The position numbers and the translations under genes were made by a program. From NCBI RefSeq assembly GCF_031769215.1, contig NW_026782031.1, positions 1 through 64,000 of the forward strand: 64,000 bases of DNA, in the 5' to 3' direction. This document shows, piece after piece, positions 2,830 to 62,799 of this stretch. Within the stretch, counting starts at the first letter, position 1. Each line of letters begins with the position of its first letter. Below the pieces are notes generated by a model, which made no database searches, was not told the DNA's origin, and saw only the letters and a program-made list of their open reading frames with translations. Source of the stretch: Ylistrum balloti. Its lineage: Eukaryota.

Positions 2830-3229
2830 CTAAAGTACCAATAGTTGGCACTGGATACAAAGTGGAAACAGCACCATGTGCTTCTCTTAAAACTGGTGAC
2901 CGAATTTCCTCCGCCAGTAGAGATAGTCCCGGGTAGGCTCTTTTGTCAACACCACGGATAAGTCGAGTCTGTAGTTGAACAATGCTATTGTCTTTGCTCT
3001 CTTTGACCATCGCCATCCTGTACATTACATATAGTGATTTTGATAATTTGATTACGTATATAATGCACTGGTACCTATAAGCTGTACTGCATTTGGATAT
3101 ACTAAAACTTGAAACGTGTTCGCTCTGCGAAATTAGCTATGTCTCTCTTCCGAGACCCGGAGAGCTACCACAAGGATCTCCTTTTGACTTGACATGGTAG
3201 ATTTCTGCAGTGAAGACACCATAAAGGAC
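2830..3229 (-). pseudogene. Decayed copy of the last coding exon of the novel gene family
   Basis: Acceptor (tttgtttag) at 3230-3231, then PLWCLHCRNLPCQVKRRSLW* and, after an insertion of roughly 120 bp, LFNYRLDLSVVLTKEPTRDYLYWRRKFGHQF*EKHMVLFPLCIQ. Clearly homologous to 4751-5043 but with premature TAG (3165-3167) and TAA (2887-2889). I found no recognisable exons 1-3 next to it. Confidence 0.85.
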
Positions 3230-4750
3230 CTAAACAAAGAATGTATATTTCATTCCATTTTTAAAGTTCAAGGGTTCCACTATTTATCTGATTAGCAACA
3301 ACGTCGAAAAATCAACCTTGATTTTGAAGAGTAGAAATACCTTATCAAAATTTAAAGCCGGTATTTGTTGATTAATACGCTTAGCTGCCATTTTTCACTT
3401 TTTTATCCAATCGTTATAAACCTACAAAGCAAACGTAAAAGTACTCCAAAGATAGCACATAATATCACTAAAATCTGGTACCTGTAACTGAGCGAGATCG
3501 GTGTTTCTCAGTCAACGGATGAGATGCTGTAACATAATCCCAATCGAGGCTTTACCCGTTGTTAGAATGTTACAAGATCTTTTTCCTCCGTTTCACAAAA
3601 CAGTCTTTAAAAAATTTCAGCAGAGACAAACTTTTTCAATATTATAATTTTTATTGCAATATTTAATGCAAAATAAAGAATGGTTACATAGACATCAATT
3701 TTTTAAACAGTAAGCAAATATTAATCAAACATGACAATGACGCCTAAAGTTTATTACTTATGTGACTAACTATTGCTTTAAATATTTTCAATATAAACAA
3801 TCTGTACAAACATTCATATGGCTGTTTTTGTTATTTTGCAAGGTTGGTGAAAACATAGTTTATACAAATAAATTGAGCCAAATTATACCAATTTACGATT
3901 ACGAGGATTAAACTTATTGCTATAACAGATACATTGATTTATTAATGATTTTTTTCTTAGGACCATGATCAGACAAATATATAAAGAATTGGAACAGAGT
4001 GATATATACAAGCGTAGTCATAATATATGGAACCATAGGCAGTGGTGGTCAGTGTTCGTACTGACCACTACGACAAACATAATTCTAGGTGAAAAGTGAA
4101 TTTCAAATTATCTTGGGACGGAAGTAAAAGACACGATAACGACAACATTTCTCACTAAGGTCACGTAATAGGGAAGAATTAAATCCGGGGCATTAGCCAT
4201 GATAAACCTGTACAGGATTTTTACACAAAGCTTAGCAACATTGACAAACTTAAAAATCAAAAGTTGTACATAGATATATTGTTCCGATGTATCTGGCCGC
4301 AATGCTATTACAAATAAAAACATACAAGGCACACTGAATGGAACATCACATAAACTGATGACGTCAATCCAACATCTCTCTTTTCCATCATTTGACTACC
4401 CTCATCATTCTTATTAGAGGACAGGATATGAATCTGAAATATAAACAAACCTTTGTTGAATTTATTTTTTCCGTGTAAGTTGTTGGCTTACTTTAAAACA
4501 AATCTGTCGACAACTATGACCTGTTTAAGCCAAATGCTTTTGTCAATTTAATCGAAAATCTAAAACTGTGCATAGAGAATGTTACTCTGCAGTGTCTACT
4601 CATCAGAAATAAGTTAACATTGAATGCATTTTATTCCTTTATCTGGTCCAGCCACTGACAGAAATGATCATACTAAGGAGAAGAATGTTTAACTCCTTAT
4701 GAATAACTGCCAAAAGGGAGAGAAGTATTTTAAAACTATACAGTGCCTAC

Positions 4751-5713
4751 CTAGCGAGGAACTGGGTACCAATAGTTGATCTGGCGCTGGATACAAAGAG
4801 GAAACAGAACCATGTGCTTCTCTTCAAACTGGTGACAAAATTTCCTCCGCCAGTAGAGGTCATCCCGGGGCAGCTCCTTGGTCAACACCACGGATAACTC
4901 GAGTCCATAGTTGAACAATTTCATTGCTTTTGCCCGCTCGGCAAAATTAGCTTTGTCCCTCTTTCGAGATCCGGAGGGCTTCCACAAAGATCTTCGTTTG
5001 ACCTGACAGGGTACAGTTCCGCAGTGAGGACAGCGTGAAGGACCTAGACAAGAACATGACGTGTACATCACGATAGAGGAAATAGGATGTAAAGTAAATA
5101 TAACAAAAAGAGGACGGAATCTCATCAGACAATATTACTTACGAGTCCTCCATTCATGGATCATCGACATCATGGTTGAGTATCCCTTTCTGACACGTCT
5201 CCCAACGGCTGGAGCGTTCCTTAACAGCAGGCTTACAAGGGCACAGAGCAGAGTACACAACACCTCATTGCCAATTCGCTGAAATGTATGAAACAGGCAT
5301 TAAATCTACTTTTCGAATATAAATAGTGATTGTTACAGACAATAGATAGACTGAAAACGTCAGAGATAAAGAAGATCGTACCCTTACCATTGCAACATCG
5401 ACAGACGTTGGACAAACTTTCTCGAATTCCGATGCGGTTAGATAGTGGTAAAATCTTTGGACATATCCTGGCTCGGGCTCCACGCTAAATGGAAAAAGAA
5501 ATTAAAAGATGAAATATTTCTTTAAAAAATGTATTAACGCACAATAGTATTGGTCTTTTACTTAGAATATCGTGCATTCCATCAATATATTCACGGTAGA
5601 TATATCATTAAAATTTTTTTCTAAACTTACCATACAAGGCCCTGATATATACCGGGACCTTGATGCATGACGCTCAGCATTACCACAAATAGCAGGAATA
5701 ACCTTATATCCAT
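4751..5713 (-). CDS. Novel 4-exon, 202-aa predicted membrane or secretory-pathway protein, copy A
   Basis: Exons 5713-5631, 5484-5388, 5278-5143, 5043-4751; all introns GT-AG and phases 2/0/1 join without frameshift. Translation: MDIRLFLLFVVMLSVMHQGPGIYQGLVC-VEPEPGYVQRFYHYLTASEFEKVCPTSVDVAM-RIGNEVLCTLLCALVSLLLRNAPAVGRRVRKGYSTMMSMIHEWRT-RPSRCPHCGTVPCQVKRRSLW...KHMVLFPLCIQRQINYWYPVPR*. Exon lengths (83/97/136/293) are identical in copy B. Confidence 0.85.
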
Positions 5714-5811
5714 TGTGGTAAGCCAAAGGTTTACAATAAAAAGTAAAATTCAGGGGAGAGACTCATCATCTCCGCCTTTACCGATTGCTAAGCAGCGTAG
5801 CAACTAGAGTA

Positions 5812-5844
5812 TGACGTCACAAATGGCTTCTAATCATGACGTCA
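5812..5844. promoter_or_regulatory. Pair of perfect CRE palindromes (TGACGTCA) upstream of copy A
   Basis: TGACGTCA at 5812-5819 and 5837-5844, about 100-130 bp upstream of the ATG; the pair recurs upstream of copy B. Function is inferred. Confidence 0.5.
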
Positions 5845-8399
5845 TGCAATTGTCTGTGCATATATGTTGGGTAAACTATTATCGATGACGCTATGAATGT
5901 TACTCTGTTGAACCAAGAAGTATAATTGGGATCCCCGAATCATCTTACATTCTATTCAGCAATATCTATGGTTCCTGTTAATCTTGGCCTAATATTTCTT
6001 AGTCATATTTAGACTGAATGGAACAGTTAATCAAATGTATAAATATTGACGTAATTATGTCACATGTAACAAAAGCTCATCAAAACAACAGAAGATAGAG
6101 AAAGAGAAGTAATCTTTTTCAACTTTGTAAACAAGAAGACCTGAAGTAAGTATCTATATATAACTGTATATCACTGGGGTCCTGTGACACATAATCAGTA
6201 ATCGGGATGAAACATTTTAAAGAAATAAACATATATAAAACTTCACGCTGGGAAACGAGTTTTGGTACATGACTTGTGTATTCATTTGTGTTAGACGAAT
6301 GAAACATTTTAAGAGAGAGAGAAAAAAGGAAATATGTGTATGTTAAATATCCCAGGTGAGCTTTTAACTCTAGAGTCGTAACCGATCACCTCGTCACAGT
6401 CCGCCAATACTTTCATTTTGCAATTACCTAGCCTTGTCATTGATGCGAGTCTCGTTCGTATGGGTTATATTACACATTTTTTCAACTCTGTGAACTGAAA
6501 ATACCTCTGACCAGCAAACATTTGTTGCCCAATCAATGTTCTACAATGACGCGAGTCTCTCATCGCCGCCATTTTGTAACCGCGAGCCAGGAAGCAGACG
6601 ACGCTTGAACTTGATTTCGGGACTAAAACCATACTTTCCTAAAATTGTGTTTTGGCACTAAAGATAAATGTATTTGATTGTAAAACAAATGAAGAAGTTT
6701 CGCAATATTGACTCTTTCAAACGTTGAATCGTCACAGACAACCTAACGAATATGGAAACGAAAGAAAGTAGCCGATACGAATGTTTAAATAGCGTATGTC
6801 CACGGTTGGTCAGATCGTCTAATTAAGTCACGATGTATTCAGATCAGTTGTAGTCAAGTCCCTACTGCCATGAGTAGAGATGAGTCGAACTTGATCAAAG
6901 TCAATATTACCAGAATATACCATAAATCGTTTTAAATATATATTGTCATTATTTCTGTGTCTCTGTCGCAGGATGTTCCTAGATGAGTAAATGGTGTAAG
7001 TACACAAATATACCGGTACCCTCAGTACAGTAAAAAGCCTTGTGGGACTGGTTCACACGGACATTGAAAACGGCGTGGTAGGATAGATGATGATATTAAT
7101 CACTTTACCATCACAAGCAATTTTAAAATGTCGTTATTTTGTACATACAAATACAGACTACAGTACAGCTAACAGGTTATAAGGATTTTCTTGGGTTTTT
7201 TTTATAAATGATTACCTGGGATAGACACGGTGACATTTTGAATACTGAGATTGCATATGAATACTTATTAACGATTAGCTTGTAATGAAAATAACAAATA
7301 TTATAAACGTTTGATACGGGACAGAAATGCTATTTGCTATTGTTGTGTTATCCCTAGTAGGTGCTAAATGAAATCTGGACCGATTAGACAATAAAAATGG
7401 TTGTCATGGCGGCCGCTTTGGGAAAAAAATCGTTTCTTTTTAAGGGTTAGTCGGATGGGGACTAAATTCGAACCCGTACGACATCAAAATGGACGCTATA
7501 GACACTATATTGAAAATCTTGCTATCATACTCCTCTTGGAGAGAAGGTCAAATGAGACTTTAGCTTAAAACCTCGAGGTAAAGTCTAACGAAATCAGATC
7601 AAAACCAATCTCATAATTTTAAGCAGTAACAGAACACCAGTTCTGTCACAAACTCCAGGTAAAGTCAATAAAATATAGATACGCCAGAAATACAAGGATG
7701 AGGACATACATGTGTGATGAAAACACAAGTTTGAATCTATTCATACAATACGCCACTGTACGAATAAGACGTGTCCTTGTAAAGGTCCCATGAAAGTTAT
7801 TTGATTCATAATCTGTTTGAAAAATACTTTTACATGGAAGTAAAATTTGACAATTCAAATTACATTTCGGTCCAAAAATCTGTTAAGACTTAGTTTCGAG
7901 TTTAGGCAATGCATTCTCAGAAAGAAGTCAAAAGGTCTTAGTTTATATGTTGTATTTTATGTTCTATATCGGCAATATTTGTTTTTCCGGTGAGAATTTG
8001 CCCGGAATGTCACGTACGAGTAAAAATGAATGTCTGCGAACTATTGGAATCGTAGAATATCACAGAACAAAGTGTCAAGACAGTTTGAGTTGTATATAAT
8101 ACGACAAATGCTTTGTGGAGACGTGGTAGGTACCGCCCACAAACAGGCGTCCGAGTGTGACGTCACGTCAGAAAGATACGTATTTACTGATGACGTATTT
8201 CAACAATCGGTTTCAATCCTCTTCATAGAATCATTATAGGACTTAGATATGTCAGTTCCAGAACCGTTCAAAACAGACTGCGATATGTCAACATCCGTTT
8301 AGAGTTCAGTTTTGCTTCAATGTCAAATAGTTGCTCTCTAAGTATGGTTTAGATGATACCCCCGATTCACTAAAAGGGACTGGTCTAAATAGCTATTCA

Positions 8400-8790
8400 C
8401 AGTTTCACCTTGATAGCAGTAACGGTGTTGCTTGGGTGTATTGTCGGTCGGGAGAACATAACAGTGATAAACTTGTAATATAGCGGTGTCAGTTCGACAG
8501 AGGAAGCACTACGATTTGGGAGTATTACAACGCATGGAAGCTCCGTGACGAAATTATACGTCATTACATCATTTTTTGTATAGCTGTAATATTTACAGTA
8601 TAAATAGTTTTGCAAAAGGACTACGCACGACCTCATACTGCACGTGTTGTTAGGGCAAATTAACAGCGGCAGAACATCGCCGTGCTGTGTCACCAGATTT
8701 GTCTCCAATCAAGCATGTTCGGAATGAAATGGAGCGGCATCTGCATCAGGAGCCAAACCCTCCTGCAACATTTGAATTGACCAAGACAAA
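8400..8790 (+). mobile_element. Degenerate Tc1/mariner transposase fragment
   Basis: Interrupted frames read FHLDSSNGVAWVYCRSGEH...FDRGSTTIW, QKDYARPHTARVV and SPDLSPIKHVRNEMERHLHQEPNPPAT, matching the Tc1 DDE motifs (QDNARPH, SPDLSPIEHVW). Stops and frameshifts are present. Confidence 0.85.
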
Positions 8791-9164
8791 ATTCAATGCA
8801 GATATTTCAGTTAAGACAGTTTGTTTATAATGTTTTGATCAAGTTCAAATGTTTAAAATTTTTTAACGTTTTTTAACAAAGAAAGAATGGCTGAAAAATA
8901 GCCGTTGTTAAATTCGTTATTTTTCCGCAAAGTAGCATTTGAGTGTCACGGTAAAAGTCCATTTGTTACATGGACTACAACATATAACAAAGACTCGCAT
9001 TCCTATGATTGCAGTATTCGGCTTTGGTATGGGACACGCCGTATTCCCAATATGTAACAACACACCAGTCTTGAAAACGGCCCCGGGGTCAAACAGACCG
9101 GAAATATTGTCTTTCCAAAGTAGGTCAAAAGAGAGTTCAGTGACCTACTTCTGAATGCGGTCAA

Positions 9165-10050
9165 TAGAGTACCGAACACTGACCAATGTAAATACGGTCT
9201 GTAGAGTACCGAACACTGACCAATGTAAATCCGTTCTATAGAGTACCGAACACTGACCAATGTAAATCCGGTCTTTAGAGTACCGAACACAGACCAATGT
9301 AAATACGGTCTATACCGAACACTGACCAATGTAAATCCGTTCTATAGAGTACCGAACACTGACCAGTGTAAATACGGTCTATACCGAACACTGACCAATG
9401 TAAATCCGTTCTATAGAGTACCGAACACTGACCAATGTAAATCCGGTCTTTAGAGAACCGAACACTGACCAATGTAAATCCGGTCTTGAGAGAACCGAAC
9501 ACTGACCAATGTAAATCCGTTCTATAGAGTACCGAACACTGACCAATGTAAATCCGGTCTTTAGAGAACCGAACACTGACCAATGTAAATCCGGTCTTGA
9601 GAGAACCGAACACTGACCAATGTAAATCCGGTCTTGAGAGAACCGAACACTGACCAATGTAAATCCGTTCTATAGAGTACCGAACACTGACCAATGTAAA
9701 TCCGGTCAATAGAGTACCGAACACTGACCAATGTAAATCCGGTCTTTAGAGAACCGAACACTGACCAATGTAAATCCGGTCTATAGAGTACCGAACACTG
9801 ACCAATGTAAATCCGGTCTTTAGAGAACCGAACACTGACCTATGTTAATACGGTCTATAATGAACACTGACCAATGTAAATCCGGTCTTTAGAGAACCGA
9901 ACACTGACCAATGTGAATCCGTTCTATAGAGTACCGAACACTGACCAATGTAAATCCGGTCTTTAGAGTACCGAACACTGACCTATGTTAATACGGTCTA
10001 TACCGAACATTGACTAATGTAAATCCGGTCTTTAGAGAACCGAACTGACC
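9165..10050. repeat. 37-bp minisatellite, about 24 copies, with shorter variants
   Basis: Unit gagaaccgaacactgaccaatgtaaatccggtcttta; the ORF-track translations repeat every 37 aa (3 units). Confidence 0.95.
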
Positions 10051-10944
10051 ACTTCAACAAATTTTAATTGAGGAAAGAAATGTAAACTATTTTCGGCGAT
10101 CAAGACCGGATAAAAAAGCCATCCCGTGCGGAGATCGACCATTCGATGTACAAACTAAGAACATAAAACATCACAAGCATAAAATTGATAGATACTCTTA
10201 CAGACATGACATCACAACGATCAAGATTATTCCGGTTGTATATTTTCAAAACAAAATTACAAATTAAAACAAGGCACGGCAAACGGAATATCACAAAAAC
10301 TGATTTTGTCAACCCAAGATCATCCTCTTCCATCATTCGACCACCCTCAACATCCTTCTCTGCTCTGAGACTTGAAATGAATCTGCAGCATAAAAAACTT
10401 TATTGAATTTATTTTAACAATGTATTTTGAACAGCATCATGAGTACTAGCTTACTTGTATCGATCCGTCAACATGTAAACGATGTCTACTTCATAATACA
10501 GTTATTTAGAATATTCTGTGTTGTATTTCTAAATTTATAACAACTGACTACATGTTATGTACGTGTTTGCTGCACGATCCTTCCTGTGTAGTAATATAAA
10601 CACGATCAGAATTGATTTTGATTATAGTGATATATGAAAGATATTCATTAATACCACATTAAATGTTCTTGTCCGCCTCAAACGTATTTAGATGTCATTA
10701 TTATGTTCCTTAAATGACGTCCGTACTGACGATTCAGAATCTTCAACAACCAATACATTGACACAATAATAAGGATATATGACGAGGAAAGGGGGAGGAG
10801 GAATACAGTGCCTACCTAGCATTTTATTCCTTTATCTGGTCCAGCCACTGACAGAAATGATCATACTCAGGAGAAGAATATTCAACTTCTAATGACAAAC
10901 TGCCAAAAGGGAGAGAGGTATTTTAAATACAATACAGTGCCTAC

Positions 10945-11963
10945 CTAGCGAGGAACTGGGTACCAATAGTTGATCTGGCGCTGGATACAAAGAGGAAACA
11001 GAACCATGTGCTTCTCTTCAAACTGGTGACAAAATTTCCTCCGCCAGTAGAGGTCATCCTGGGGCAGCTCCTTGGTCAACACCACGGATAACTCGAGTCC
11101 ATAGTTGAACAATTTCATTGCTTTTGCCCGCTCGGCAAAATTAGCTTTGTCCCTCTTTCGAGATCCGGAGGGCTTCCACAAAGATCTTCGTTTGACCTGA
11201 CAGGGTACGGTTCCGCAATGAGGACAGCGTGAACGACCTAGACAAGAACATGACGGGTACATCACGATAGAGGAAATAGGATGTAAAGTAAATATAACAA
11301 AAAGAGGACGGAAACTCATCAGACAATATTACTTACGAGTCCTCCATTCGTGGATCATCGACATCATGGTTGAGTATCCCTTTCTGACACGTCTCCCAAT
11401 GGCTGGAGCGTTCCTTAACAGCAGGCTTACAAGGGCACAGAGGAGAGTACACAACATCTCATTGCCAATTTGCTGATATGAAAGAAGAAATACATATTTT
11501 TTGACCGAGAAAACAGTTTTCAATGTGGAAAGCGGCCGATGATTTAAAACTTGATACAATTAGACCAAGTTAGAAATAAAGTATAATTTAGTACGGAGTC
11601 CCATATGATTTTTACCTTTTTGATATCGGCAGGTGTTGGACAAACTTTCTCTAATTCCGATGCGGTAAAATGGTAGTAAAATCTTTGGAGATATCCTGGC
11701 TCCGGTTCCACGCTTAATGGAAAGAAAATGAAAGTGAACGATGAAGTAATTCTTGATTTGTAAAAAAATATTCTTTTGTTAATACAAAACTCCAAAAGAT
11801 ATTGACATTTTCTGAGAATATCGCGCGTGCCGACAAAATAGTCGCAGTTGCAAAGTATAAAGAAAACTTGCTAAACTTACCATACAAGGCCCTGATATAC
11901 ACCGGGACCTTGTTGCATTACGCTCAGCATTACCACAAATAGCAGGAATAACCTTATATCCAT
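10945..11963 (-). CDS. Novel 4-exon, 202-aa predicted membrane or secretory-pathway protein, copy B
   Basis: Exons 11963-11881, 11712-11616, 11472-11337, 11237-10945; GT-AG introns, same exon lengths and phases as copy A, open throughout. Exon 2 reads VEPEPGYLQRFYYHFTASELEKVCPTPADIKK. Confidence 0.85.
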
Positions 11964-12061
11964 TGTGGTAAGCCAAAGGTTTACAATAAAAAGTAAAATT
12001 CAGGGGAGAGACTCATCATCTCCGCCTTTACCGATTGCTAAGCAGCTTAGCAACTAGAATA

Positions 12062-12104
12062 TGACGTCACAAATGGACCAATGTAATAAACCATGATGAC
12101 GTCA
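12062..12104. promoter_or_regulatory. Pair of perfect CRE palindromes (TGACGTCA) upstream of copy B
   Basis: TGACGTCA at 12062-12069 and 12097-12104; the spacer differs from copy A but both sites are intact. Confidence 0.5.
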
Positions 12105-12530: not shown

Positions 12531-13507
12531 TTTAACGGCACTCTTTTAATCGGGATTGATCCTGGATGTCGATAAAACCCTGTTTCAATATCGGCCAAGT
12601 ATTTCTCGAGAGGAAAATGCTGTCATTTGTTAAACACTTGATACTGGTGCTATCACTTAATCGCTATGGCATTCCCTGTGATAACGGTGTCTGTATGACA
12701 ATTAAACACCGTCAGTCACAGAAATAGCGACTCATTCAGATATCGGTTAGATGGCCGTACAGCGAATCGATCTGTAATTTAGTAGGCTACACCTGTCAAC
12801 AATACAAACAGGTGCTAACATCAGATAATTTTATATCTTAGTGTCAGACATCGTCATACAGATACAAATTAGTTCAAATTATGGCTGTCAACTCAACATG
12901 TTCTACGATGGTTTGGATGCCTTGGTATCGGAAAAAACATTGCGTGGCTGTTAAAATCATACAGAAGGATAAAATCAAATTGTGTTGAATAGGATGTCTT
13001 TGCGTCAATGTATTTGATGCAAACAGGAATCAAATCACCGTGTTGTAATCTTTACATAAAAATAACACACCGATTGTTTGAATATTTTGAGGTTGGAAAC
13101 ATTCGTACAAACAGGAAAATCAACACAGGCCTACCAACATTAACATGATTATATAAAGCTCCATTTCTTTTTTGATTGCCATCCTTGTAGTGACTAACAT
13201 GGGATAGCTTTAATGTTCAACAACTGTTTACACCGGATGTGACCTTTCGTCATGGAATAAGGTCACAGGTCGGAGGACTGAAATCTGGATGCCAACGGGT
13301 CAACTTTAAGACAACATTTATGTTTTGGTTGTCAGCTTCATATTGGATAATATTGTCGACATAGATTGGGTGTATTAATATTATCTATTTCCGGTACAGT
13401 AAACACTCCAATACGGGGTTGTGAATAATATAGTTCATACGTTCGAGGGTCGCATACTGCAATACTGACTCAAACCAACAATCGTTAGCATTAAAGTATT
13501 GTATATT

Positions 13508-14584
13508 ATGATGGCTGCTCATAAAACAGACATGGTTTGGTTAGAAATAATTGATGCTAATCCTGTTGAGAAGGTTCCAATCGCATGCGTGTGTGCTGAA
13601 GGACTGAACGGAACTATAACTTTCATCGATGAAAATGCCCAGGACATTCCTCGAGCAGATGACCAGTGCTTTCCTTTTCCAGAAAATGTCCACGAACAAA
13701 TAAAACAGATCGTTCTTATTCCAATTACAATCCTGATTCTCGGATGTAATTCAGGAGTTTTGTGTCTAATTGCGACAAACAAAATCTTCCGTACTCCAGC
13801 CTACCTTCTCATTGCAAACCTTGGCCTTGCCGATCTGACAGTCGGTGTCGTAAGCATCGGCACCATGCTTACTCAAGCTAAAGAGGAAACTCTCGACCTG
13901 TGTTTAGTTCGGATAGGATTCACAGTGGCATGTTGTGTTTCTTCGATTATCTGTCTGATGTGTATCGCCATAGAACGGTATATCGCCATCACGTATTCGC
14001 TGACGTACAGACAAACTGTTACGGCTTGCAAGGTAACTGTAGTGGTTCTCCTTTCATGGCTTGTATCGCTCGTGGTTGGATTCGCCCCTTTGATAGGATG
14101 GAAGATAGAATCATATCACTACTATTGTTCCTTTCTTTACGTCCTTCCATCTGACTACATAATATTTTTGTTTTCTTCCTGTGTTTTCCTACCAATAGTT
14201 GTAACTTTTACAATGTATGCAGTGATCTATAAGTATGCCAGACGGCACATCAAGAGAATTGAAGCCATAGAAAATCTTAACTTAGACAGAAGAAATAATA
14301 GAATTTTCAGATTTTCTCCAAGAAATTTGAGATCTCTGAAAACCTTGCTGGCAGTTTTTGGTTGTGTCATTGTCACGTGGCTGCCGTTTTTGATTGGAAC
14401 GATCACCCAGGTCATATATGGTTATACTACCTGTTTCTTAAAGGACATTGTAGGAACGCATCTTCTGTTATTGGGGTTCACAAACTCGTTCCTGAATCCA
14501 TTGATATACGCGCTGGGAACCAAGGACTTTAGAGACAAAGTCAGAGAAACGTTTGGGCGTCGCGTCAGTTTTAACTCTCCGTAA
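13508..14584 (+). CDS. Class A (rhodopsin-like) GPCR, single coding exon
   Basis: Seven hydrophobic segments with class A motifs: TM1 GCN, TM2 NLGLADL, Cys at the top of TM3, IAIERYIAI (ERY), TM4 SW, ECL2 Cys, TM5 FLP, TM6 TWLP, TM7 NSFLNPLIY. The first ATG is at 13508; the track start at 13499 is TTG. Subfamily not assignable by eye. Confidence 0.95.
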   Translation: MMAAHKTDMVWLEIIDANPVEKVPIACVCAEGLNGTITFIDENAQDIPRADDQCFPFPENVHEQIKQIVLIPITILILGCNSGVLCLIATNKIFRTPAYLLIANLGLADLTVGVVSIGTMLTQAKEETLDLCLVRIGFTVACCVSSIICLMCIAIERYIAITYSLTYRQTVTACKVTVVVLLSWLVSLVVGFAPLIGWKIESYHYYCSFLYVLPSDYIIFLFSSCVFLPIVVTFTMYAVIYKYARRHIKRIEAIENLNLDRRNNRIFRFSPRNLRSLKTLLAVFGCVIVTWLPFLIGTITQVIYGYTTCFLKDIVGTHLLLLGFTNSFLNPLIYALGTKDFRDKVRETFGRRVSFNSP

Positions 14585-18764: not shown

Positions 18765-19415
18765 ACATCTCAACACCTGTCATCTAAATGTATAATATCT
18801 CAACACCTGTCATCTACATGTAAAATGGCACAACACCTGTCATCTACATGTAAAATGTCTCAATACCTGTCATCTACATGTAAAGTGTCACAACACCTGT
18901 CATCTACATGTATAATGTCTCAGCACCTGTAATCTACATGTATAATATCTCAACACCTGTCATCTACATGTATAATATCTCAACACCTGTCATCTACAGG
19001 TATACTGTCTAAACACTTGTCATCTACCGGTATACTGTCTCAACACCTGTCATCTACATGTATAATATCAACACCTGTCATCTACATGTATAATATCTCA
19101 ACACCTGTCATCTACAGGTATACTGTCTAAACACTTGTCATCTACAGGTATACTGTCTCAACACCTGTCATCTACATGTACCATATCTCAACACCTGTCA
19201 TCTACAGGTATACTGTCTATACACCTGTGATCTACAGGTATACTGTCTAAACACCTGTCATCTACATGTAAAATGTCTCAACACTTGTCATCTACATGTA
19301 TAATATCTCAACACCCGTCATCTACATGTAAAATGTCTCAACACTTGTCATCTACATGTAAAATGTCTCAACAGCTGTCATCTACATATAAAATGTCTCA
19401 ACACCTGTCATCTAC
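18765..19415. repeat. 30-bp minisatellite, about 22 copies
   Basis: Unit ctcaacacctgtcatctacatgtataatat with variants. Confidence 0.95.
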
Positions 19416-22369
19416 AAATATATCTTTAAACTACGAGACAAAAACGATACAAATTTAAATGTTCGCCAGTCGTTTGAGATATAATACTGTGTACACCACC
19501 ACAGTTGAATGGTCAGTATGTTAACTGAAACAACAAACTCTGATGTGCGGTGTGTTTGACTAGATGATATACATAATTTGATTTCAGAAAGTAGAATATA
19601 AATAAATGTAGAATTTGAACGATGTACAAATACCAAAAATATATCGATCTGTAAGAATTGACAGCAACTAAAATATCGATTACGTTGACGAAAACAGATT
19701 ACGTAAAACTATTCTTTACAATTCAGGGAGTGAATTGTTGTCAAATTTGGCGATTGAGTACATATATCTATAAACAATAAACAAGTTTGTATAATACAAA
19801 TTCTATCGCAAGGAAAACTGTATACGTAGCATCCGAAAATAATGGAAAGTTTGCGGTTTGAGAAAGTTATTGTATGGCAAGGCATTTTCGCACCAAAAGA
19901 CACTGACGGAATGATCAACAATCAACAGTAGCCCCAGCAAAGGAAGCCGTGTTGGAATTAAATGGTTGGATGGTTCAGGAATAGTCAATTTTTTATTTGT
20001 TACATCAGCAATAGTTATATGGTAAAGACACTGATATGTCAAAAATGTTTCAACGATAAATAATCACTTTTATTTATACTGACTTATGAGATGTATGAAG
20101 TACAACACCCCCCCCCTCCCACTCCCCTGAATTATAATTTCGGAAACATTCGCACTCCGTAAGAGAGACAATATAATTCCCATCGACCAGAAATCGTTTA
20201 GTTATAACAATAACCATTGACAATAATTCAAGAAACATTCCCTCCTCACAATGACCATACACCTTCCCTGTTAAACATATTTACCAAACAGAAGAATTAA
20301 CTTCCACCATACAACATAACAAACCTCGATCTAGTATGTCTGGAAGTACTATAAGTTGTATCACCTAATTTTCCCATTCAGAAACGATTTCAATTTACTA
20401 CAAGATCGAGAACTTGGCCACGTCTCAAAAAAGGATAAATTCAAAAATGAAGGTTTAATTTAGAAATTTTAGCAAACGTCATTACATGTTATCGTCCAAA
20501 TAACACCGAGAAATAAGAAACTTGTTGTATGTATGATAAAGTTTCCAAAAACGATTTGGCGGTTTTATCTAGATATCACATGACAATCCAGATTTTAGAT
20601 TTGAGATTAAGAATTACATAAATATCTGATAACGATACGACAATTTGAACTACATGGATCGACATCCGGTGATCTGCTACACCATCACCATTACACTGGC
20701 TCTTGAAAGGCACTTTGCCTACTCAGACCGGAAACAGGAAATGGCTATTTGTTTGTCGTGAATATAATATCCTATCCAACAGCCTTATCATGGTTATAGT
20801 CCAGATTTACCTTCTTTGCATTAAAAATGGATCCGAGTATCGATTTTTCTCATTAAAGGTATTTCTGATTTTCAGAAAAATAAAAGGCAATGCGCTAATG
20901 AAAATGAGTCCAGCCCCAATTTAAAAAAAAAATGCTTTATCAGCAGACATTCGTCAATAATAAAGTGTTCTGGTAAAAAAGAACACAACAAAGTAAAAAA
21001 CATTCTTAATTAGAAATTTGTCATGTACGCCAGAAAACACGGGCACGTGCTAAGGGAGACAACTGGTGTAGAATTTCGGATACGTTTTACCATAAAGCTG
21101 TCGATTGAATCAACAAAAGACGGGATTACTGTTTAAATGTCCATTAAAGACCAACATTCTGGGGGATTAGTAGCAATATTTTCCATTTTAGACCATAATA
21201 AACACTTTACCGGATTTAATAATAATCATTTTCAGTTCAAGTTTATCTTAAAATTGATCTGCCTAAACGTCCCTACACAAACAGGTAAACTCAGGTTATC
21301 TATACCCGTCTCTCCACTCACCATCTGTCAATGTTGATTTTCACCATTCAAAATACATCAGGTGTTTAACCAAGAGTCTTCATATATAATACCAGGAAAA
21401 TGAAAGTAACGCAGGCTACCTTATTGATTGAACTATTGTGACAAATGGTTACCTGTAAGTTGCAGACTTACAGACTATGAAATATTTAATAAATTTGGTC
21501 AATTAATTTATCACCAGGTAACTGAAATAAGTTTAGCCTTCACACATCTGAGAATACAATCAATTCTTATTGGTAAATAGAGACGACTGTTAACCAATGG
21601 AATGCTCTGTAGCTTGGCATAAAATCAAAATAATCTAAAGTGAACTTTGATTGGTTGATAAAAAAAATATAGTAATAAATGGTAATGAAGTATATTTCAA
21701 ATTAATCGGGTGCCACTATAGCCAGGTGAAAACTATTAACCCTTGATCCGGAAGTAAAATTCTTAAACTAATGAATTTGTGTTGCTGCAGGATTAGTTTG
21801 CAGCACACACAAAAAAAAAACATGGGGTTGCTCCAAGATATCAAACTGTCTGTAAGTTCTGTAATTATTATTTTACAAAAGAGGAAGACATTTCAATATT
21901 AAAAACAACATGTATATGATAACCAAGGCACCAATATCTAAGATATATAAAAGGCAGATATAACTATAATAGCTTTTTAAGCCCAGCCCTACCTTTCTCA
22001 TCAGTATGTTTGTAGTTCAATCCTGGAACTAAATCTGACAAAATAGTGTCTCATGGTAATGTAACTGAATGGATTAGATTGAAGATAAACAGCCCATCTT
22101 GTGAATAAAATACTTGTTAACCAATGAGATGCTCAGTACCTTGGTACCAAGAAAGTGTCAATACAAAGGATTCTGGTTTGTCCAACTAATGACCATTGAG
22201 ATGCCCATCAACTTTGTACCAAATAACAAATGCAATATAATGTATTCTGATTGGTAAATATGTGTGACTGTTAACCAATGGGGTTCTCTGTAACTTAGCA
22301 CAAAGTCACAATCGTCAATAACATGTTATGTGATTGATTTATAGAAATTTTAATAAACCATAAGCCAGA

Positions 22370-29100: not shown

Positions 29101-32100
29101 CAGTGTGCTTATACAGTGATACATGCATGGTAAACATCAGTGCCCCTCCGTACATGCAAAAATATAGGCAAAGGTATTTTATATTGCTTTTTTCGATCTG
29201 GTACTTAAAATTTCAAATTTTTATTTACTTTAATTGCAATTTTGTCTTGAAACAACAGGATTATAACATAAACAATTTCTCATGTACTGTATTGTTGTAA
29301 ATTTACAGAAAAAAAAATAAAGATATTTTATTTTTCAAAATCTAAAATTCATATATGAATATACTTTTACATATTGATAGAATCTTTAAACTATTAAATT
29401 TCATGACATCCTTCCTCTCAAATGTAATAATCACACTGTGCTCTAACAAACAAGACATAACTTAAAGAAATAATGTTCTCAAAAAAGAAAAAGCAAAATT
29501 CTCAAAGATATTCAATGTTTTAACTTATACATTTTTCTATTTTTTTTTTCAAACAAAAATAAACAGGAAGTTTTGTGATGCGTACCAGTACTTTGACATC
29601 TTCGCCATATATGAGATTATTATTATGGAGATAAGGCGTAGCCATGCCAGTCATCAATAGGTTAAGAAGGGCCATAGTGCAGTCTTCATTGTCTGTTAGT
29701 AACTTCCTTTGTCGGTCATCTTCTTCCATCTGTAAATCCTCATAGATCCTGTAATATTATAAGAAAATGCTTTTATTTCTGTCTAGTTATACTTAACGAC
29801 ATCATCATTCTTTCTCCCCCAGGTATGTGGCCATAGTAAGGGAGATAACTCAAGTTGCTAAACCAGAGTTTTGAGTGCCCAACTTGCAGAGAAGAAAAAC
29901 CTGGTTACATCTCTTCAAAATGAAGACGAAGAGGGTATTTAAGGGATTATCAAGAACAAAAAAGAATCTCAAGTTATAAAATTTGTATGCATTTATGTAA
30001 CAATCTTGGTTACGTTTAAATATTATTTTAACTTAAAACTGATTTTGAATTTTGTGATTCTGAACATTGACAATTAAAATTAGGTGACTACAGCATTTTT
30101 TCTCAATTGGAGGTCAGGTTATAGCCAACATCTGGCTGACTGTTGAGGTCAGGTGAGTGGCCGGTACTACTACACAGGTGACCAGATAGATTGTCACATC
30201 TGAACAGATACATCCTTGGAGACTGTATTTTCCAGTGACTTCTCGAAATTACAAACTTGACAAAATGTTGCAAATAAATTCTGATTAATGACCTTAGTTT
30301 ATCTAAATGCAGGACTTACTTTATCTGTGAATCTAAGTCTAAGACAGAATGATGTTGCTATAGGGTTAACTTGTACTTACAGCACTCACTTAGCTGTGGT
30401 CCTAGACAGGATGATGCTGTTATAGGGTTAACATGTAATTAAAGTACTCACTTAGCTGTGGTCCTAGACAGGATGATGTTGTTATAGGGTTAACATGTAA
30501 TTAAAGTACTCACTTAGCTGTGGTCCTAGACAGGATGATGTTGTTATAGGGTTAACATGTAATTAAAGTACTCACTTAGCTGTGGTCCTAGACAGGATGA
30601 TGCTGTTATAGGCTTAACATGTAATTAAAGTACTCACTTAGCTGTGGTCCTAGACAGAATGATGTTGCTATAGGGTTAACTTGTACTTACAGCACTCACT
30701 TAGCTGTGGTCCTAGACAGGATGATGTTGTTATAGAGTTAACTTGTAATTAAGTACTCACTTAGCTGTGGTCCTAGACAGGATGATGCTGTTATAGGGTT
30801 AACATGTAATTAAAGTACTCACTTAGCTGTGGTCCTAGACAGGATGATGCTGTTATAGGGTTAACATGTAATTAAAGTACTCACTTAGCTGTGGTCCTAG
30901 ACAGGATGATGCTGTTATAGGGTTAACATGTAATTAAAGTACTCACTTAGCTGTGGTCCTAGACAGGATGATGCTGTTATAGGCTTAACATGTAATTAAA
31001 GTACTCACTTAGCTCTGGACCTAGACAGGATGATGTTGTTATAGGGTTAACTTGTAATTAAAGTACTCACTTAGCTCTGGACCTAGACAGGGTGATGTTG
31101 TTATAGGGTTAACTTGTAATTAAGTACTCACTTAGCCGTGGTCCTAGACAGGATGATGCTGTTATAGGGTTAACATGTAATTAAAGTACTCACTTAGCTG
31201 TGGTCCTAGACAGGATGATGCTGTTATAGGGTTAACATGTAATTAAAGTACTCACTTAGCTGTGGACCTAGACAGGATGATGCTGTTATAGGGTTAACAT
31301 GTAATTAAAGTACTCACTTAGCCGTGGTCCTAGACAGGATGATGTTGTTATAGGGTTAACTTGTAATTAAGTACTCACTTAGCTGTGGACCTAGACAGGA
31401 TGATGCTGTTATAGGGTTAACGTGTAATTACAGTTCTCACTTAGCTGTGGACCTTTGTTATAGGGTTAACTTGTAATTACAGTACTCACTTAGCTGTGGT
31501 CCTAGACAGGATGATGCTGTACAAGAACATGATACAGCCATTGTTTCCCTCTCTGCGAAACTAGAACACAGATACAGAATAACCATACATTAAATACACT
31601 ACAGCAGTAAGTGATCTAAAGTATTTTATCCAGTCATAATCAATTTTCTCACAAATTGAAGATTTTACTCTCACATACAAATAATGTAGCTCTACATTAT
31701 GAACAATATAATTCTTTGGACAATTTATTTGATTTTTTCTCATTTTTTAGATCATTTTAGCTACCGGCTCTAAATACTTATATCTGAGAATTTAATTGTG
31801 CAAATCATGATTAAGTGATTATAAGACTGCAGTGTACTTGAATTTTGAAGCAAAGACAATGTATAATTGAAAAATTGCACCAACTTCTTCAAATCATGTT
31901 CTCCGCAAGGTTTCTCACACATGCAACCTTAAAATATGTATCAGGAAAGATGATTTTTTATTGTATTCTACGTAAACTTTCACAGTAAATTTACCTCTGT
32001 CCAGTGTCTATTCATAAACATCTCCAGGTCCTTGTAGTTCTTGAATTCAAATAATAAAATCTGAAAATTTAAATAATGTAAATCAAATGTACTGTAATCA

Positions 32101-53815: not shown

Positions 53816-53959
53816 NNNNNNNNNNNNNNNNNNNNNNNNNNNNNNNNNNNNNNNNNNNNNNNNNNNNNNNNNNNNNNNNNNNNNNNNNNNNNNNNNNNNN
53901 NNNNNNNNNNNNNNNNNNNNNNNNNNNNNNNNNNNNNNNNNNNNNNNNNNNNNNNNNNN
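53816..53959. other. Assembly gap (144 N)
   Basis: Run of n characters. Confidence 1.
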
Positions 53960-60814: not shown

Positions 60815-61150
60815 AGTGTCCTCACATCTAACTGTGAGTCTGAGGAAGTCACATTACCGTGGTAGACAGAGCAGTTGACCCACACGACCTTGGGTGAAGA
60901 TCCAGTGAATGTGGTTTGATGCTTTTCTATCTGCTGCACTTTCTGTTTCTTAGGTAGCGGAGGGACAGATCTAGAACATTTTGTGTTGTTGTCATGATTC
61001 TGTATTTGAGAAGACAAATTATCTGAATTGTTCTGGATGGCATGTGACGGGCCTTCCATTTTATTCGGGGAATGAGCAACCAGCTACTACAAAGAATCCC
61101 TACCTCAAAATGACCGTGGCCATTCTCAGGGAAATAAAACCTAGAAATCA
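60815..61150 (-). mobile_element. Dispersed SINE/MITE-like element, same family as 38505-38790
   Basis: Reverse complement shares three colinear blocks with 38505-38790; part of it seeds the 280-bp array. Confidence 0.55.
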
Positions 61151-62040: not shown

Positions 62041-62799
62041 CGGTTCATTTAAGGAATAGACGTATTGTAAATTACAAACACTTGTAAAATAAAGGAATTT
62101 ATAATAGGAATACTTGTTTAATAAGAAACGTGCACAGGTAAAATAACAACATATAGATAACAAGCTCCCACAGAGTGAGAAAGTCATACACATACCTCAA
62201 AATTGTTCAAAGGTTATGTTAAGTAGTAAAATGTATTGAGAGAGGTATATGAGTAAATACATTGGAAATCTTAAACATCACTGTTGTAAAAACCTCAAAT
62301 GAAAAATCCACAAGAAGTACAGGTGTAAAGAGTGATCACTCAATGGACTGGGTCTATACTCAAGTCTAAACATTGGTTTAACCGTGAATGGACTGTGATC
62401 TTCAGATTTGAGTTTATTTATGTAGGTGATTGGTGAGTTTGTACGTCTGAAGGACATGGTTTGATGAACCTTATAAAACATCAATATTAGGTTACATGTT
62501 TTTTTTAAAGTTTGTTTGATGACAAAAATGTGAATCATTATATGTAATAAAGTATTAGAAAACAGGTACCAGCCTCATCTGTCAATACACCCATACTTAT
62601 AATGTGGGCGTATTGAGAGACGGGGCGGGTACCTGTGATTAGAACTGAGGTTATGCTATATATTGTGTCATTATCTTTGATATGTACATAACTTATAGAA
62701 ACTGCAGGTCTACACCCAGTTCATGTTTGAATCTGTAAATTTATATATTGAAATTGACTCTGCACTAATTTCATAAAGATGTTGTTGTTCTATACACCA

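What the first reader, a model, noticed from the sequence alone, without database searches (positions are those of the whole stretch)
4751..11963. Unassigned two-gene family with a receptor-like layout: leader, small variable ectodomain, membrane segment, conserved Cys-rich tail
Seen: two intact 202-aa, 4-exon genes 6.2 kb apart that the ORF track captures only in fragments. Each exon maps to one module: hydrophobic N-terminus (LFLLFVVMLSVM), a 32-aa polar exon with one Cys (a second Cys spans the exon 1/2 junction, so a disulfide loop is possible), a hydrophobic stretch (VLCTLLCALVSLLL) followed by basic residues (RNAPAVGRRVRK, positive-inside pattern), then a 97-aa domain with CPHCGTVPC. I recognise no named family for the whole protein. 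Inference: a small single-pass or hairpin membrane receptor family, possibly for recognition or immunity. The second hydrophobic stretch is short (about 14 aa), so topology is uncertain.
Basis: partly seen in the sequence, partly recalled or inferred. Interest (0 to 1): 0.85.

Follow-up and report, generated by a model that had tools for sequence, protein, structure and literature searches.

The report
Scallop-specific small membrane protein gene family
Two neighbouring genes in this scallop genome belong to an undescribed family of dozens of small membrane-anchored proteins, whose conserved inner domain matches no known protein family or solved structure, so the genes are real but their function is unknown.

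Summary
Confirmed: there are two intact four-exon, 202-aa genes on the minus strand (A 4751-5713, B 10945-11963). They are identical to RefSeq models LOC132546691 and LOC132546690 of the scallop Ylistrum balloti. A broken exon-4 remnant lies at 2846-3241.

It is not a two-gene family. This genome has about 22 annotated copies, and Mizuhopecten, Pecten and Argopecten have dozens more, often as tandem pairs. The seven loci spliced here, from three of these genera, share one four-exon plan. A spliced transcript of an Argopecten member exists.

It is not a transposon. Dispersed paralogues share only the gene and a ~130-bp promoter with two TGACGTCA sites.

The predicted protein has a signal peptide, a ~40-aa two-Cys ectodomain, one membrane helix and a basic cytosolic domain (C-x2-C-x4-C…H…C, possibly zinc-binding). 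That domain is the selected core (pN 0.08 against pS 0.87 between genera). It folds confidently (pLDDT 83) and matches no Pfam family and no PDB fold, only unnamed bivalve proteins.

Exon 4 is homogenised among dispersed paralogues (pS 0.14 against 0.58 in exons 1-3). The ectodomain shows no diversifying selection, so an immune or recognition role is unsupported.

The scan's own P2X7-ballast lead for this stretch failed the HMM and fold tests, although two short motifs still fit. My best guess is a membrane-anchored adaptor.

The parts
4751..5713 (-). Gene copy A (LOC132546691), 202 aa. Exons: 5713-5631 (signal peptide), 5484-5388 (ectodomain), 5278-5143 (TM helix plus basic juxtamembrane stretch), 5043-4751 (C-terminal Cys/His domain plus stop).
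   Evidence: Spliced model with GT-AG introns. Identical to P0001 / XP_060066392.1.
10945..11963 (-). Gene copy B (LOC132546690), 202 aa. Exons: 11963-11881, 11712-11616, 11472-11337, 11237-10945.
   Evidence: Spliced model. Identical to P0060 / XP_060066391.1.
5714..5844 (-). Conserved promoter and 5'UTR of copy A. It holds two TGACGTCA (CRE-type) palindromes at 5812-5819 and 5837-5844, a near-palindrome GTTGCTACGCTGCTTAGCAAT at 5784-5804, and GGCGGAGATGATGAGTCTCTCCCC at 5753-5776.
   Evidence: About 80% identical to the upstream regions of dispersed paralogues and of Pecten and Argopecten genes, while introns and 3' flanks do not align. An Argopecten transcript contig starts inside the palindrome element.
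11964..12104 (-). Conserved promoter and 5'UTR of copy B. CRE-type sites at 12062-12069 and 12097-12104, a perfect palindrome TTGCTAAGC-T-GCTTAGCAA within 12034-12054, and the GGCGGAG… box at 12003-12026.
4626..5286 (-). Recently homogenised tract shared with 10819-11480 of copy B: exon 3, intron 3, exon 4 and ~125 bp of 3' flank, 96.7% identical. The 5' half (5397-5826 against 11625-12076) is only 83% identical.
   Evidence: Self-BLAST. Intron 3 is 98% identical against 72-76% for introns 1 and 2. dS is 0.03-0.06 in exons 1, 3 and 4 against 0.28 in exon 2.
2846..3241 (-). Third copy: a degraded exon-4 remnant (pseudogene fragment) with in-frame stops and a ~137-bp insertion. No exons 1-3 were detected.
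   Evidence: tblastn and blastn hits at 71-88% identity. Sequence read.

Best explanation
**Shown**
- The two genes are functional members of a scallop (Pectinidae) multigene family. It has roughly 20 or more genes per genome, scattered over many scaffolds, often as small tandem pairs.
- All members examined keep one four-exon plan. They also keep a ~130-bp promoter/5'UTR with two TGACGTCA sites.
- The family is not transposon-borne.

**Predicted from sequence**
- Each protein is a ~200-aa type I single-pass membrane protein.
- It has a cleavable signal peptide (probably cut after the conserved Q-G-P-A/G, near residue 21).
- A ~40-residue ectodomain has two conserved Cys (C28, C52), probably forming a disulphide loop.
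- One transmembrane helix spans about residues 62-85.
- The strongly basic ~95-residue cytosolic domain is mostly helical. It has invariant C110-x2-C113-x4-C118 and C189 and near-invariant H112 and H182, so it may form a zinc site.

**Shown about that domain**
- It is the selected core of the protein.
- It is kept nearly uniform among dispersed paralogues of one genome, most simply by gene conversion confined to exon 4. The N-terminal exons keep old divergence.

**Inferred mechanism (least certain step)**
- The protein acts as a membrane-anchored adaptor or regulatory subunit.
- The uniform cytosolic domain would engage one conserved intracellular partner or ligand.
- The diverged ectodomain and TM halves would let different members sit with different membrane partners or compartments.
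- Transcription would be driven through bZIP/CREB-type sites.
For: - **Gene models and annotation:**
- **Family size and range:** 41 hits, all Pectinidae, nearly all 202 aa. An exhaustive profile search of 1.84 billion representatives found only 15 clusters: scallop proteins plus three short metagenome ORFs.
- **Tandem pairs recur:** consecutive LOC numbers and second copies in L007 and L008.
- **Conserved exon plan:** seven loci of three genera.
- **Spliced mRNA:** Logan contig L010 carries the uninterrupted CDS of P0042. It aligns to genomic L009 in four blocks, exactly at the predicted exon borders.
- **Not a TE:** similarity between dispersed paralogues and between genera is limited to the gene and ~115-145 bp upstream. 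No shared terminal inverted repeats were found.
- **Promoter footprint:**
- **Topology:** hydropathy and charge.
- **Selection:** exon 4 has pN 0.08-0.10 against pS 0.84-0.88 between Ylistrum and Pecten.
- **Exon-4 homogenisation:** A against the dispersed paralogue P0002 has pS 0.14 in exon 4 and 0.58 in exons 1-3 (Fisher p = 1.6e-7). The C-part tree unites the Ylistrum copies that the N-part tree splits into two starred groups.
- **Domain fold:** AlphaFold2 on a 20-sequence alignment gives pLDDT 83.4 and pTM 0.75. The only structural neighbours are unnamed bivalve proteins (Mizuhopecten, Mytilus, Crassostrea) at TM 0.58-0.65.
Against: - There is no direct RNA evidence for the window's own two copies. 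The one run found was genomic: its contigs span introns and show no intron-skipping joints.
- No signal-peptide or TM predictor was available. Topology rests on hydropathy, charge and the -3/-1 rule. In copies A and B the hydrophobic core is short because R80 replaces the family's usual G.
- Zinc binding is inferred from conserved Cys/His only. Model coordinates could not be inspected. C175 is replaced by V in a Mizuhopecten subgroup, and C118 and H182 are missing in some distant members.
- The full-length model is poor (pLDDT 58).
- The AU test does not reject monophyly of the Ylistrum copies in the N-terminal part (p = 0.46). The gene-conversion reading therefore rests on the synonymous-site contrast, not on tree conflict.
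- The adaptor mechanism has no direct support. No partner, motif (no ITAM) or expression pattern is known.
Confidence: 0.6

Rival explanations
1. The C-terminal domain is a shortened, highly diverged relative of the P2X7 cytoplasmic ballast / ZCD / KolX domain. That is a Zn- and guanine-nucleotide-binding module, probably of Kolobok transposon origin. Here it would be tethered to the membrane by its own TM helix, much as in P2X7. This concerns ancestry and biochemistry, and it could coexist with the adaptor idea.
For: - The lead comes from the scan's note s1-246969.
- Rump et al. (PMC7016195) list the positions conserved in invertebrate ballast domains: R546, A549, Y550, Y/F553, W559, I/V568, P570, C572, R578 and F/Y581-P582.
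- The scallop family has R142-x2-A145-x3-F149 and L185-x-P187-x-C189-x8-Y198-P199. The internal spacings inside each block are the same as in the ballast list, and both blocks occur in 28 of 29 members.
- The second pattern arises in only 0.06% of shuffles of the domain, and both patterns together in 0.004%.
- Like the ballast, the domain is C-terminal, predicted cytosolic and Cys-containing.
- The only named protein in the AFDB list is a P2X7-intracellular-domain protein, at rank 15.
Against: - No PF20478 hit at E<=10 for any of nine diverse members or for the exons.
- No P2X7 chain at E<=10 in a profile search of PDB sequences.
- Foldseek against all PDB chains returned 0 hits.
- The AFDB hit K1PT17 has E 8.8 and TM 0.17, which is chance level.
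- Language-model neighbours show no P2RX7_C.
- The defining seven-Cys dinuclear-zinc motif is absent. Only C-x2-C-x4-C plus one invariant and one variable Cys are present.
- The two motif blocks need a 21-residue insertion between them, and W559, Y550 and R578 are not matched.
- The motif match was noticed after the fact, among thousands of possible families.
Confidence: 0.25
2. The protein is a membrane-tethered nuclear or nucleic-acid-binding factor. The basic, Cys/His-containing cytosolic domain would be released by regulated proteolysis and act in the nucleus.
For: - The C-domain has net charge +8 to +12.
- A KR-x10-KRDKA bipartite-NLS-like pattern is present in copy A and in 16 of 29 members.
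- There is a weak, sub-threshold resemblance of the C-x2-C region to a transposase zinc ribbon (PF12760, E 0.14).
Against: - The NLS-like pattern is absent from 13 of 29 members.
- No DNA-binding fold or family was matched.
- No recognisable intramembrane or juxtamembrane cleavage motif was identified.
Confidence: 0.08
3. The protein is a secreted or processed precursor. The second hydrophobic stretch would not be a membrane anchor, the whole protein would enter the secretory pathway, and the di- and tribasic sites (KRR, RKR) would be convertase cleavage sites releasing Cys-containing peptides.
For: - There is an N-terminal signal-like leader.
- The hydrophobic core is short in copies A and B (KD19 1.8).
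- There are several basic clusters and 7-9 Cys in the protein.
Against: - In most members the hydrophobic stretch reaches KD19 2.0-2.3 over ~20 residues, and the charge asymmetry is positive-inside.
- The most conserved part is a ~95-residue folded helical domain, not short peptides between cleavage sites.
- The Cys positions within the TM stretch vary.
Confidence: 0.05
4. The gene is a passenger or domesticated gene of a mobile element, which would explain its dispersal to many scaffolds.
For: - Copies lie on many scaffolds.
- Exon depth in a genomic run is tens of times the flanking depth (the tool warns that this is no copy number).
- A pogo-like transposase lies 6 kb from one Pecten copy.
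Against: - Similarity between dispersed copies stops ~115-145 bp upstream of the ATG and within a few bases of the stop codon.
- No shared terminal inverted repeats flank A or B.
- Introns are retained, so the copies are not retrocopies.
- Neighbours are ordinary genes that differ at each locus: a GPCR, ankyrin-repeat protein, ASC channel and SSF transporter.
- Purifying selection is strong across genera.
Confidence: 0.02

Closest known systems
P2X7 cytoplasmic ballast / ZCD domain (Pfam PF20478 P2RX7_C, PANTHER PTHR36981; KolX of Kolobok transposons; zebrafish Nanor)
   Same: - It is a C-terminal, cytosolic, Cys-containing domain that follows a membrane helix, as in P2X7.
- Two short motif blocks, R-x2-A-x3-[FY] and [ILV]-x-P-x-C-x8-[FY]-P near the C-terminus, have the same internal spacing as positions reported conserved in invertebrate ballast domains (PMC7016195).
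   Different: - It is about half the size.
- It lacks the seven conserved zinc-coordinating Cys.
- The family HMM does not match.
- No fold match to solved P2X7 structures was found.
- A 21-residue insertion is needed to line up the two blocks.
- Free-standing ZCD proteins are reported to lack a TM region (PMC7016195), whereas this family has a leader and a TM helix.
Small bitopic signalling adaptors and accessory subunits (DAP12/TYROBP, DAP10, FcRγ, CD3ζ; KCNE, FXYD, MRAP). This is a comparison of layout only, made from general knowledge.
   Same: - The layout matches: signal peptide, very short Cys-containing ectodomain, single TM helix, and a cytosolic tail that carries the function.
- A conserved acidic residue (E65) sits at the outer end of the TM helix.
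   Different: - There is no sequence or fold relationship.
- No ITAM is present in any of 29 members.
- The YxxM seen in copies A and B (YSTM) is not conserved in the family.
- The tail is a folded ~95-residue Cys/His domain rather than a short linear motif.
Unnamed bivalve proteins sharing the predicted fold (AlphaFold DB clusters A0A210PWW4, A0A210QZQ7, A0A6J8B8D0, A0A6J8DSQ7, K1QBI5)
   Same: - Foldseek probability is 0.95-1.00, TM by query is 0.58-0.65 over ~95-100 residues, and sequence identity is 17-25%.
- The domain lies at or near the C-terminus in four of the five.
- By UniProt accession style they come from Mizuhopecten, Mytilus and Crassostrea. The tool did not print the organism, so these species are my reading.
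   Different: - They are beyond the reach of HMMER from the scallop family.
- Their lengths differ (144-337 aa).
- None has a name or a known function.
- Their sequences could not be fetched here, so whether they have a leader and a TM helix is unknown.

Membership tests
P2X7 ballast / ZCD (PF20478, PTHR36981, KolX) | Significant match to the family's profile HMM | tested here: not met
   No PF20478 hit at E<=10 for the exons or for nine diverse members. A profile search of PDB sequences found no P2X7 at E<=10. The exhaustive profile search returned only 15 clusters; those looked up were this family's own members and fragments. PANTHER and profile-profile tests were not available.
P2X7 ballast / ZCD (PF20478, PTHR36981, KolX) | Seven conserved Cys coordinating two zinc ions (PMC9587614; 'remarkably conserved' in PMC7016195) | tested here: not met
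   Only C110, C113, C118 and C189 are invariant or nearly so. C175 is replaced by V in a Mizuhopecten subgroup. Distant members lack C118.
P2X7 ballast / ZCD (PF20478, PTHR36981, KolX) | Ballast fold as in the full-length P2X7 structures | tested here: not met
P2X7 ballast / ZCD (PF20478, PTHR36981, KolX) | Conserved C-terminal positions R546, A549, Y550, Y/F553, W559, I/V568, P570, C572, R578, F/Y581-P582 (PMC7016195) | tested here: inconclusive
   R142, A145, F149, L185, P187, C189, Y198 and P199 fit with identical spacing inside each of two blocks (28 of 29 members). Y550, W559 and R578 are not matched, and 21 extra residues separate the blocks.
P2X7 ballast / ZCD (PF20478, PTHR36981, KolX) | Binds zinc and GDP/GTP | not testable with these tools
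   This needs recombinant protein, metal analysis and nucleotide-binding assays.
Type I single-pass membrane protein (topology class) | Cleavable N-terminal signal peptide | tested here: inconclusive
   Read by eye: n-region with R4, a 12-residue hydrophobic core (LFLLFVVMLSVM), and conserved Q-G-P-A/G with small residues at -3 and -1. No SignalP-type predictor was available.
Type I single-pass membrane protein (topology class) | One hydrophobic helix of TM strength with positive-inside charge bias | tested here: met
   KD 19-residue maximum is 1.8-2.3, centred on residue 76. No second peak lies in the C-domain (maximum 0.65-0.96). Net charge is -2 to 0 before the helix and +5 to +7 after it.
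ITAM-bearing adaptors (DAP12, FcRγ, CD3ζ) | Y-x-x-[LI]-x6-12-Y-x-x-[LI] in the cytosolic tail | tested here: not met
   0 of 29 members.
   Shared sequence ends ~115-145 bp upstream of the ATG and at the stop codon. The short imperfect inverted repeats around A and B are unrelated to each other.

The most novel reading that the evidence does not exclude
The C-terminal domain is a cytosolic zinc-binding fold, restricted to bivalves and not previously recognised. It would serve as the common output module of a diversified set of minimal type I membrane adaptors. Exon-limited gene conversion among dispersed paralogues would keep it uniform across the genome, while the outer and TM halves stay free to diverge. 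This would be a lineage-specific signalling module under CRE-type transcriptional control.
Probability: 0.2. Interest if true: 0.7.

Novelty: new variant of a known kind. Interest (0 to 1): 0.42.

Why it matters
Molluscan genomes are full of taxon-restricted genes of unknown function. This one is better founded than most:
- The C-terminal domain is under strong purifying selection across scallop genera.
- The domain model is confident, yet it has no counterpart in the PDB or in named AlphaFold clusters.
- The family has tens of copies per genome.
- A promoter with bZIP-type sites is conserved across genera.
- Homogenisation is unusually confined to one exon among dispersed copies.

If the domain proves to be a new zinc-binding fold, or a membrane-tethered offshoot of the P2X7 ballast/KolX domain, it would add a bivalve-specific signalling or regulatory module. 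It would also give a handle on the still unknown function of ballast-like domains.

Today it remains an uncharacterised family that RefSeq already lists as 'uncharacterized protein'. The immediate value is a clean description and a set of testable predictions, not a discovery of function.

Tried and rejected
**Searches that found nothing**
- Pfam scans of the separate exons and of nine full-length or divergent members gave only sub-threshold noise (DUF7577, Zn_ribbon_IS1595, Fer4).
- PDB sequence searches with one sequence and with a profile gave nothing relevant.
- A further profile search (A3) and a walk from the most distant metagenome exon added one ORF only.
- Language-model neighbour searches scored 0.56 or less, which is uninformative.
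- Fold searches with the domain model found no match in the PDB by Foldseek, the PDB by VIA-align, BFVD, Swiss-Prot AFDB or the ESM Atlas.
- Paper searches for six LOC identifiers, six UniProt accessions and the metagenome sample names returned nothing.
- A regex scan of all held DNA for a ballast-type C-x-C-x2-C…CC ORF, meant to seed a profile-profile test, found none. The HHalign test against P2RX7_C therefore could not be run.

**Results too weak to use**
- The full-length AlphaFold model had pLDDT 58 and was not used for fold search.
- The only sequencing run offered was genomic, so there is no splice evidence for copy A.

**Readings rejected**
- Positive selection on the ectodomain: dN/dS is 0.56 between A and B and lower in other pairs.
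- Tree conflict as proof of gene conversion: the AU test gave p = 0.46.
- Transposon context.
- ITAM in the tail.
- A conserved bipartite NLS: only 16 of 29 members have the pattern.
- The long ORFs at 9003-9724: they are translations of a 37-bp satellite, not genes.


Full report
**What is there**

On the minus strand of the window lie two complete genes with identical architecture. Copy A has exons 5713-5631, 5484-5388, 5278-5143 and 5043-4751. Copy B has exons 11963-11881, 11712-11616, 11472-11337 and 11237-10945. Exon lengths are 83/97/136/293 nt, every intron is GT-AG, and both encode 202 residues.

The proteins are letter-for-letter the RefSeq models XP_060066392.1 (LOC132546691) and XP_060066391.1 (LOC132546690) of the saucer scallop Ylistrum balloti.

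A third, broken copy was missed. It is an exon-4 remnant at 2846-3241 (-) with in-frame stops and a ~137-bp insertion. No N runs touch the region; the only one is at 53816-53959.

**Not a two-gene family**

A word-indexed search found 41 clusters, all from Pectinidae (Y. balloti, Mizuhopecten yessoensis, Pecten maximus, Argopecten irradians), almost all of 202 aa and all 'uncharacterized protein'. The Y. balloti clusters hold 22 distinct sequences. Where members were listed, each carries its own LOC number.

Consecutive LOC numbers show recurrent tandem pairs or triplets on different scaffolds: 132546690/91, 132544464/65, 132554715/16, and 117335406-08 in Pecten. Fetched loci from Argopecten and Pecten also carry a second copy within 3-9 kb.

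A genomic run shows exon depth tens of times that of the introns. This fits many copies, although the tool warns that depth is not a copy number.

An exhaustive HMMER profile search of 1.84 billion cluster representatives found only 15 clusters. These were the scallop proteins, their fragments, and three short ORFs on metagenome contigs from a Tara Oceans sample and a sample labelled BUSC20-1. The three ORFs keep the signature C-x2-C-x4-C … R-x2-A-M … F-P-x-C-[IV]-Q-x2-[IL]-x2-W-Y-P.

**Real, expressed, selected**

The four-exon plan and intron phases are identical in seven loci from three genera, although intron lengths vary from 99 to 1410 nt.

A 1235-nt Logan contig (SRR19746220) carries the uninterrupted CDS of the Argopecten member P0042. 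It aligns to the genomic locus in four blocks, exactly at the predicted exon borders. This is direct evidence of splicing for the family. For the window's own copies I obtained no RNA evidence, because the one run offered was genomic.

Between Ylistrum and Pecten, exon 4 has pS 0.84-0.88 (saturated) but pN only 0.08-0.10. The C-terminal domain is therefore under strong purifying selection.

**Not a transposon**

Dispersed paralogues in the same genome (L001, L011, L012) and orthologous-grade genes in Pecten (L002) share with copies A and B only the exons and ~115-145 bp upstream of the ATG. For L001, L012 and L002, similarity ends within a few bases of the stop codon. L011, the closest relative, also keeps the introns and a short 3' piece.

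The weak inverted repeats around A and B are unrelated to each other. Neighbours differ at each locus and are ordinary genes.

**Promoter**

The ~130 bp upstream are as conserved as the coding sequence, at about 80% identity across genera. Four elements recur:
- a distal ATGACGTCA site;
- a proximal CATTTGTGACGTCA site;
- a palindrome GTTGCTAAGCTGCTTAGCAAT;
- a GGCGGAGATGATGAGTCTCTCCCC box.

In the window the TGACGTCA sites lie at 5812 and 5837 for copy A and at 12062 and 12097 for copy B. The Argopecten transcript contig begins inside the palindrome. The two CRE-type sites therefore lie just upstream of the transcribed region. Regulation by bZIP/CREB-type factors is an inference from the consensus, not a test.

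**Protein anatomy**

- *Leader.* Residues 1-21 look like a signal peptide: R4, a 12-residue hydrophobic core, and conserved Q-G-P-A/G.
- *Ectodomain.* Residues ~22-61 form a short segment with nearly invariant C28-V-E-P-E-P-G-Y and C52.
- *Membrane helix.* A 19-residue hydropathy window peaks at 1.8-2.3 around residue 76. The flanking charge is -2 to 0 on the N side and +5 to +7 on the C side, which fits N-out/C-in.
- *C-domain.* Residues 107-202 are strongly basic (net +8 to +12). C110, C113, C118 and C189 are invariant, and H112 and H182 are nearly invariant.

Mean pairwise identity across 29 members is 65% for the leader, 61% for the ectodomain, 59% for the TM segment, 47% for the juxtamembrane stretch and 76% for the C-domain. 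The ectodomain is therefore not especially variable, and its dN/dS is below 1 in every comparison.

Zinc binding by the Cys/His set is an inference. I could not inspect model coordinates.

**Fold**

The full-length model was poor (pLDDT 58). The C-domain alone, with a 20-sequence alignment that includes the distant metagenome members, gave pLDDT 83.4 and pTM 0.75. The model has a coil bearing the C-x2-C-x4-C motif packed against four helices.

Fold searches gave the following:
- Foldseek against all PDB chains returned nothing at E<=10.
- BFVD, Swiss-Prot AFDB and the ESM Atlas gave nothing.
- AFDB clusters returned five unnamed proteins, which I take from their accession style to be from Mizuhopecten, Mytilus and Crassostrea. 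They score TM 0.58-0.65, probability 0.95-1.00 and 17-25% identity.

At the fold level the domain therefore seems to be bivalve-wide but unnamed.

**Mosaic evolution**

Copies A and B are 96.7% identical from exon 3 through ~125 bp past the stop, with intron 3 at 98%. They are only 83% identical from exon 2 to the promoter. Exon 2 has dS 0.28 against 0.03-0.06 in the other exons. This agrees with the scan's note s1-246943.

The same pattern appears at longer range. Copy A against P0002, on another scaffold, has pS 0.58 in exons 1-3 but 0.14 in exon 4 (9 of 63 against 42 of 73 synonymous sites; Fisher p = 1.6e-7). Copy A's exon 4 is closer to that of P0002 than to that of P0004, whose exons 1-3 are much closer to A.

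All within-Ylistrum exon-4 comparisons (pS 0.03-0.40) lie far below the between-genus value of about 0.86. Exons 1-3 of the two Ylistrum subgroups are as far apart as between genera (about 0.6).

The C-part tree unites the seven closely related Ylistrum copies (SH-aLRT 94), whereas the N-part tree splits them into two starred groups. The AU test does not reject Ylistrum monophyly for the N part (p = 0.46), so the case rests on the synonymous-site contrast.

The simplest reading is repeated gene conversion confined to exon 4. Constraint keeps exon 4 similar enough to recombine, whereas the other exons and the introns have drifted too far.

**The P2X7-ballast lead**

The scan's note s1-246969 suggested a distant relationship to the P2X7 ballast domain. 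I tested it seven ways:
- Pfam PF20478 gave no hit.
- A PDB profile search found no P2X7.
- The exhaustive profile search found only 15 clusters; those looked up were this family's own members and fragments.
- Foldseek against the PDB found none.
- VIA-align found none.
- The only named AFDB hit is a P2X7-intracellular-domain protein at rank 15, with E 8.8 and TM 0.17, which is chance level.
- Language-model neighbours showed none.

The family also lacks the seven zinc-coordinating Cys that define the ballast (PMC9587614; PMC7016195).

One thing remains. Two short blocks, R142-x2-A145-x3-F149 and L185-x-P187-x-C189-x8-Y198-P199, reproduce the internal spacing of positions that Rump et al. list as conserved in invertebrate ballast domains. 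The second block arises in 0.06% of shuffles, and both together in 0.004%. [quoted passage not shown]

The resemblance was noticed after the fact and needs a 21-residue insertion between the blocks. I rate true homology at about 0.25 and do not file the family as a member. A profile-profile test could not be run, because no ballast sequence was available through the tools.

**Mechanism**

What is shown:
- a selected, spliced, multi-copy gene family that is not mobile;
- predicted single-pass, N-out/C-in proteins whose conserved, folded, basic Cys/His domain faces the cytosol.

What is inferred:
- The small ectodomain and folded tail fit an adaptor or accessory subunit better than a ligand-binding receptor.
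- Genome-wide uniformity of the tail, against old divergence of the outer and TM half, suggests one common intracellular partner and varied membrane contexts.

Alternatives are a membrane-tethered nuclear factor (an NLS-like pattern is present in only 16 of 29 members), a processed secreted precursor, and a ballast-like Zn/GDP module. An immune or recognition role has no support here.

**Verdict**

- The family is undescribed and lies outside every named family I could test. It is, however, an instance of a common phenomenon, a taxon-restricted gene family already annotated as 'uncharacterized'.
- Interest is moderate.

Noticed in passing
window 9154-10045: A 37-bp satellite (24.6 copies, 87% matches) lies between the two gene copies. 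The long ORFs listed at 9003-9724 on the minus strand are translations of this repeat, not genes.
   Followed up: partly
window 13499-14584 (+): A single-exon rhodopsin-family GPCR ORF of 361 aa (Pfam 7tm_1, E 8e-38) lies head-to-head with copy B, about 1.5 kb from its start. I did not examine whether this pairing recurs at other family loci. It does not at L001, L002 or L012, judging by their listed neighbours.
   Followed up: partly
window 32643-32954 (-): An ORF matches the MINDY-3/4 deubiquitinase conserved domain (E 7e-10). It is probably one exon of a larger gene.
   Followed up: no
window 18768-19416, 30342-31520, 39341-41107, 47703-48888, 60930-62050: The window holds several large minisatellite arrays. 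Their periods are 30, 62/371, 87, 44/132 and 280 bp. The last has four copies at 99% identity.
   Followed up: no
protein P0047 (LOC132562362, Y. balloti, another scaffold): This 276-aa RefSeq model starts with the second half of the family's C-domain. It runs on past the usual stop into a coiled-coil region with a weak MIEAP-like end. It may be a chimeric or read-through annotation, or a real exon-4 fusion.
   Followed up: no
L003, L004, L005 (metagenome sample 'BUSC20-1', SRR11455649) and L006 (Tara Oceans ERR1726715): Short metagenome contigs carry single-exon homologues of the C-domain at 30-41% identity. They are presumably animal (molluscan?) DNA within the samples. The prokaryotic gene caller truncated one of them to 56 aa, while the exon reads on for ~100 aa. 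The source organism was not identified.
   Followed up: partly
L002:2726-4203 (Pecten maximus): A pogo-like transposase gene (HTH_psq, DDE_1) lies 6 kb upstream of the Pecten family member. It is not linked to family members at the other loci examined.
   Followed up: no
window 4307-4468 vs 10256-10415: A third, weaker block of similarity (76%) lies ~300-450 bp downstream of both copies. The original duplicated unit therefore reached about 450 bp past the stop codon.
   Followed up: no
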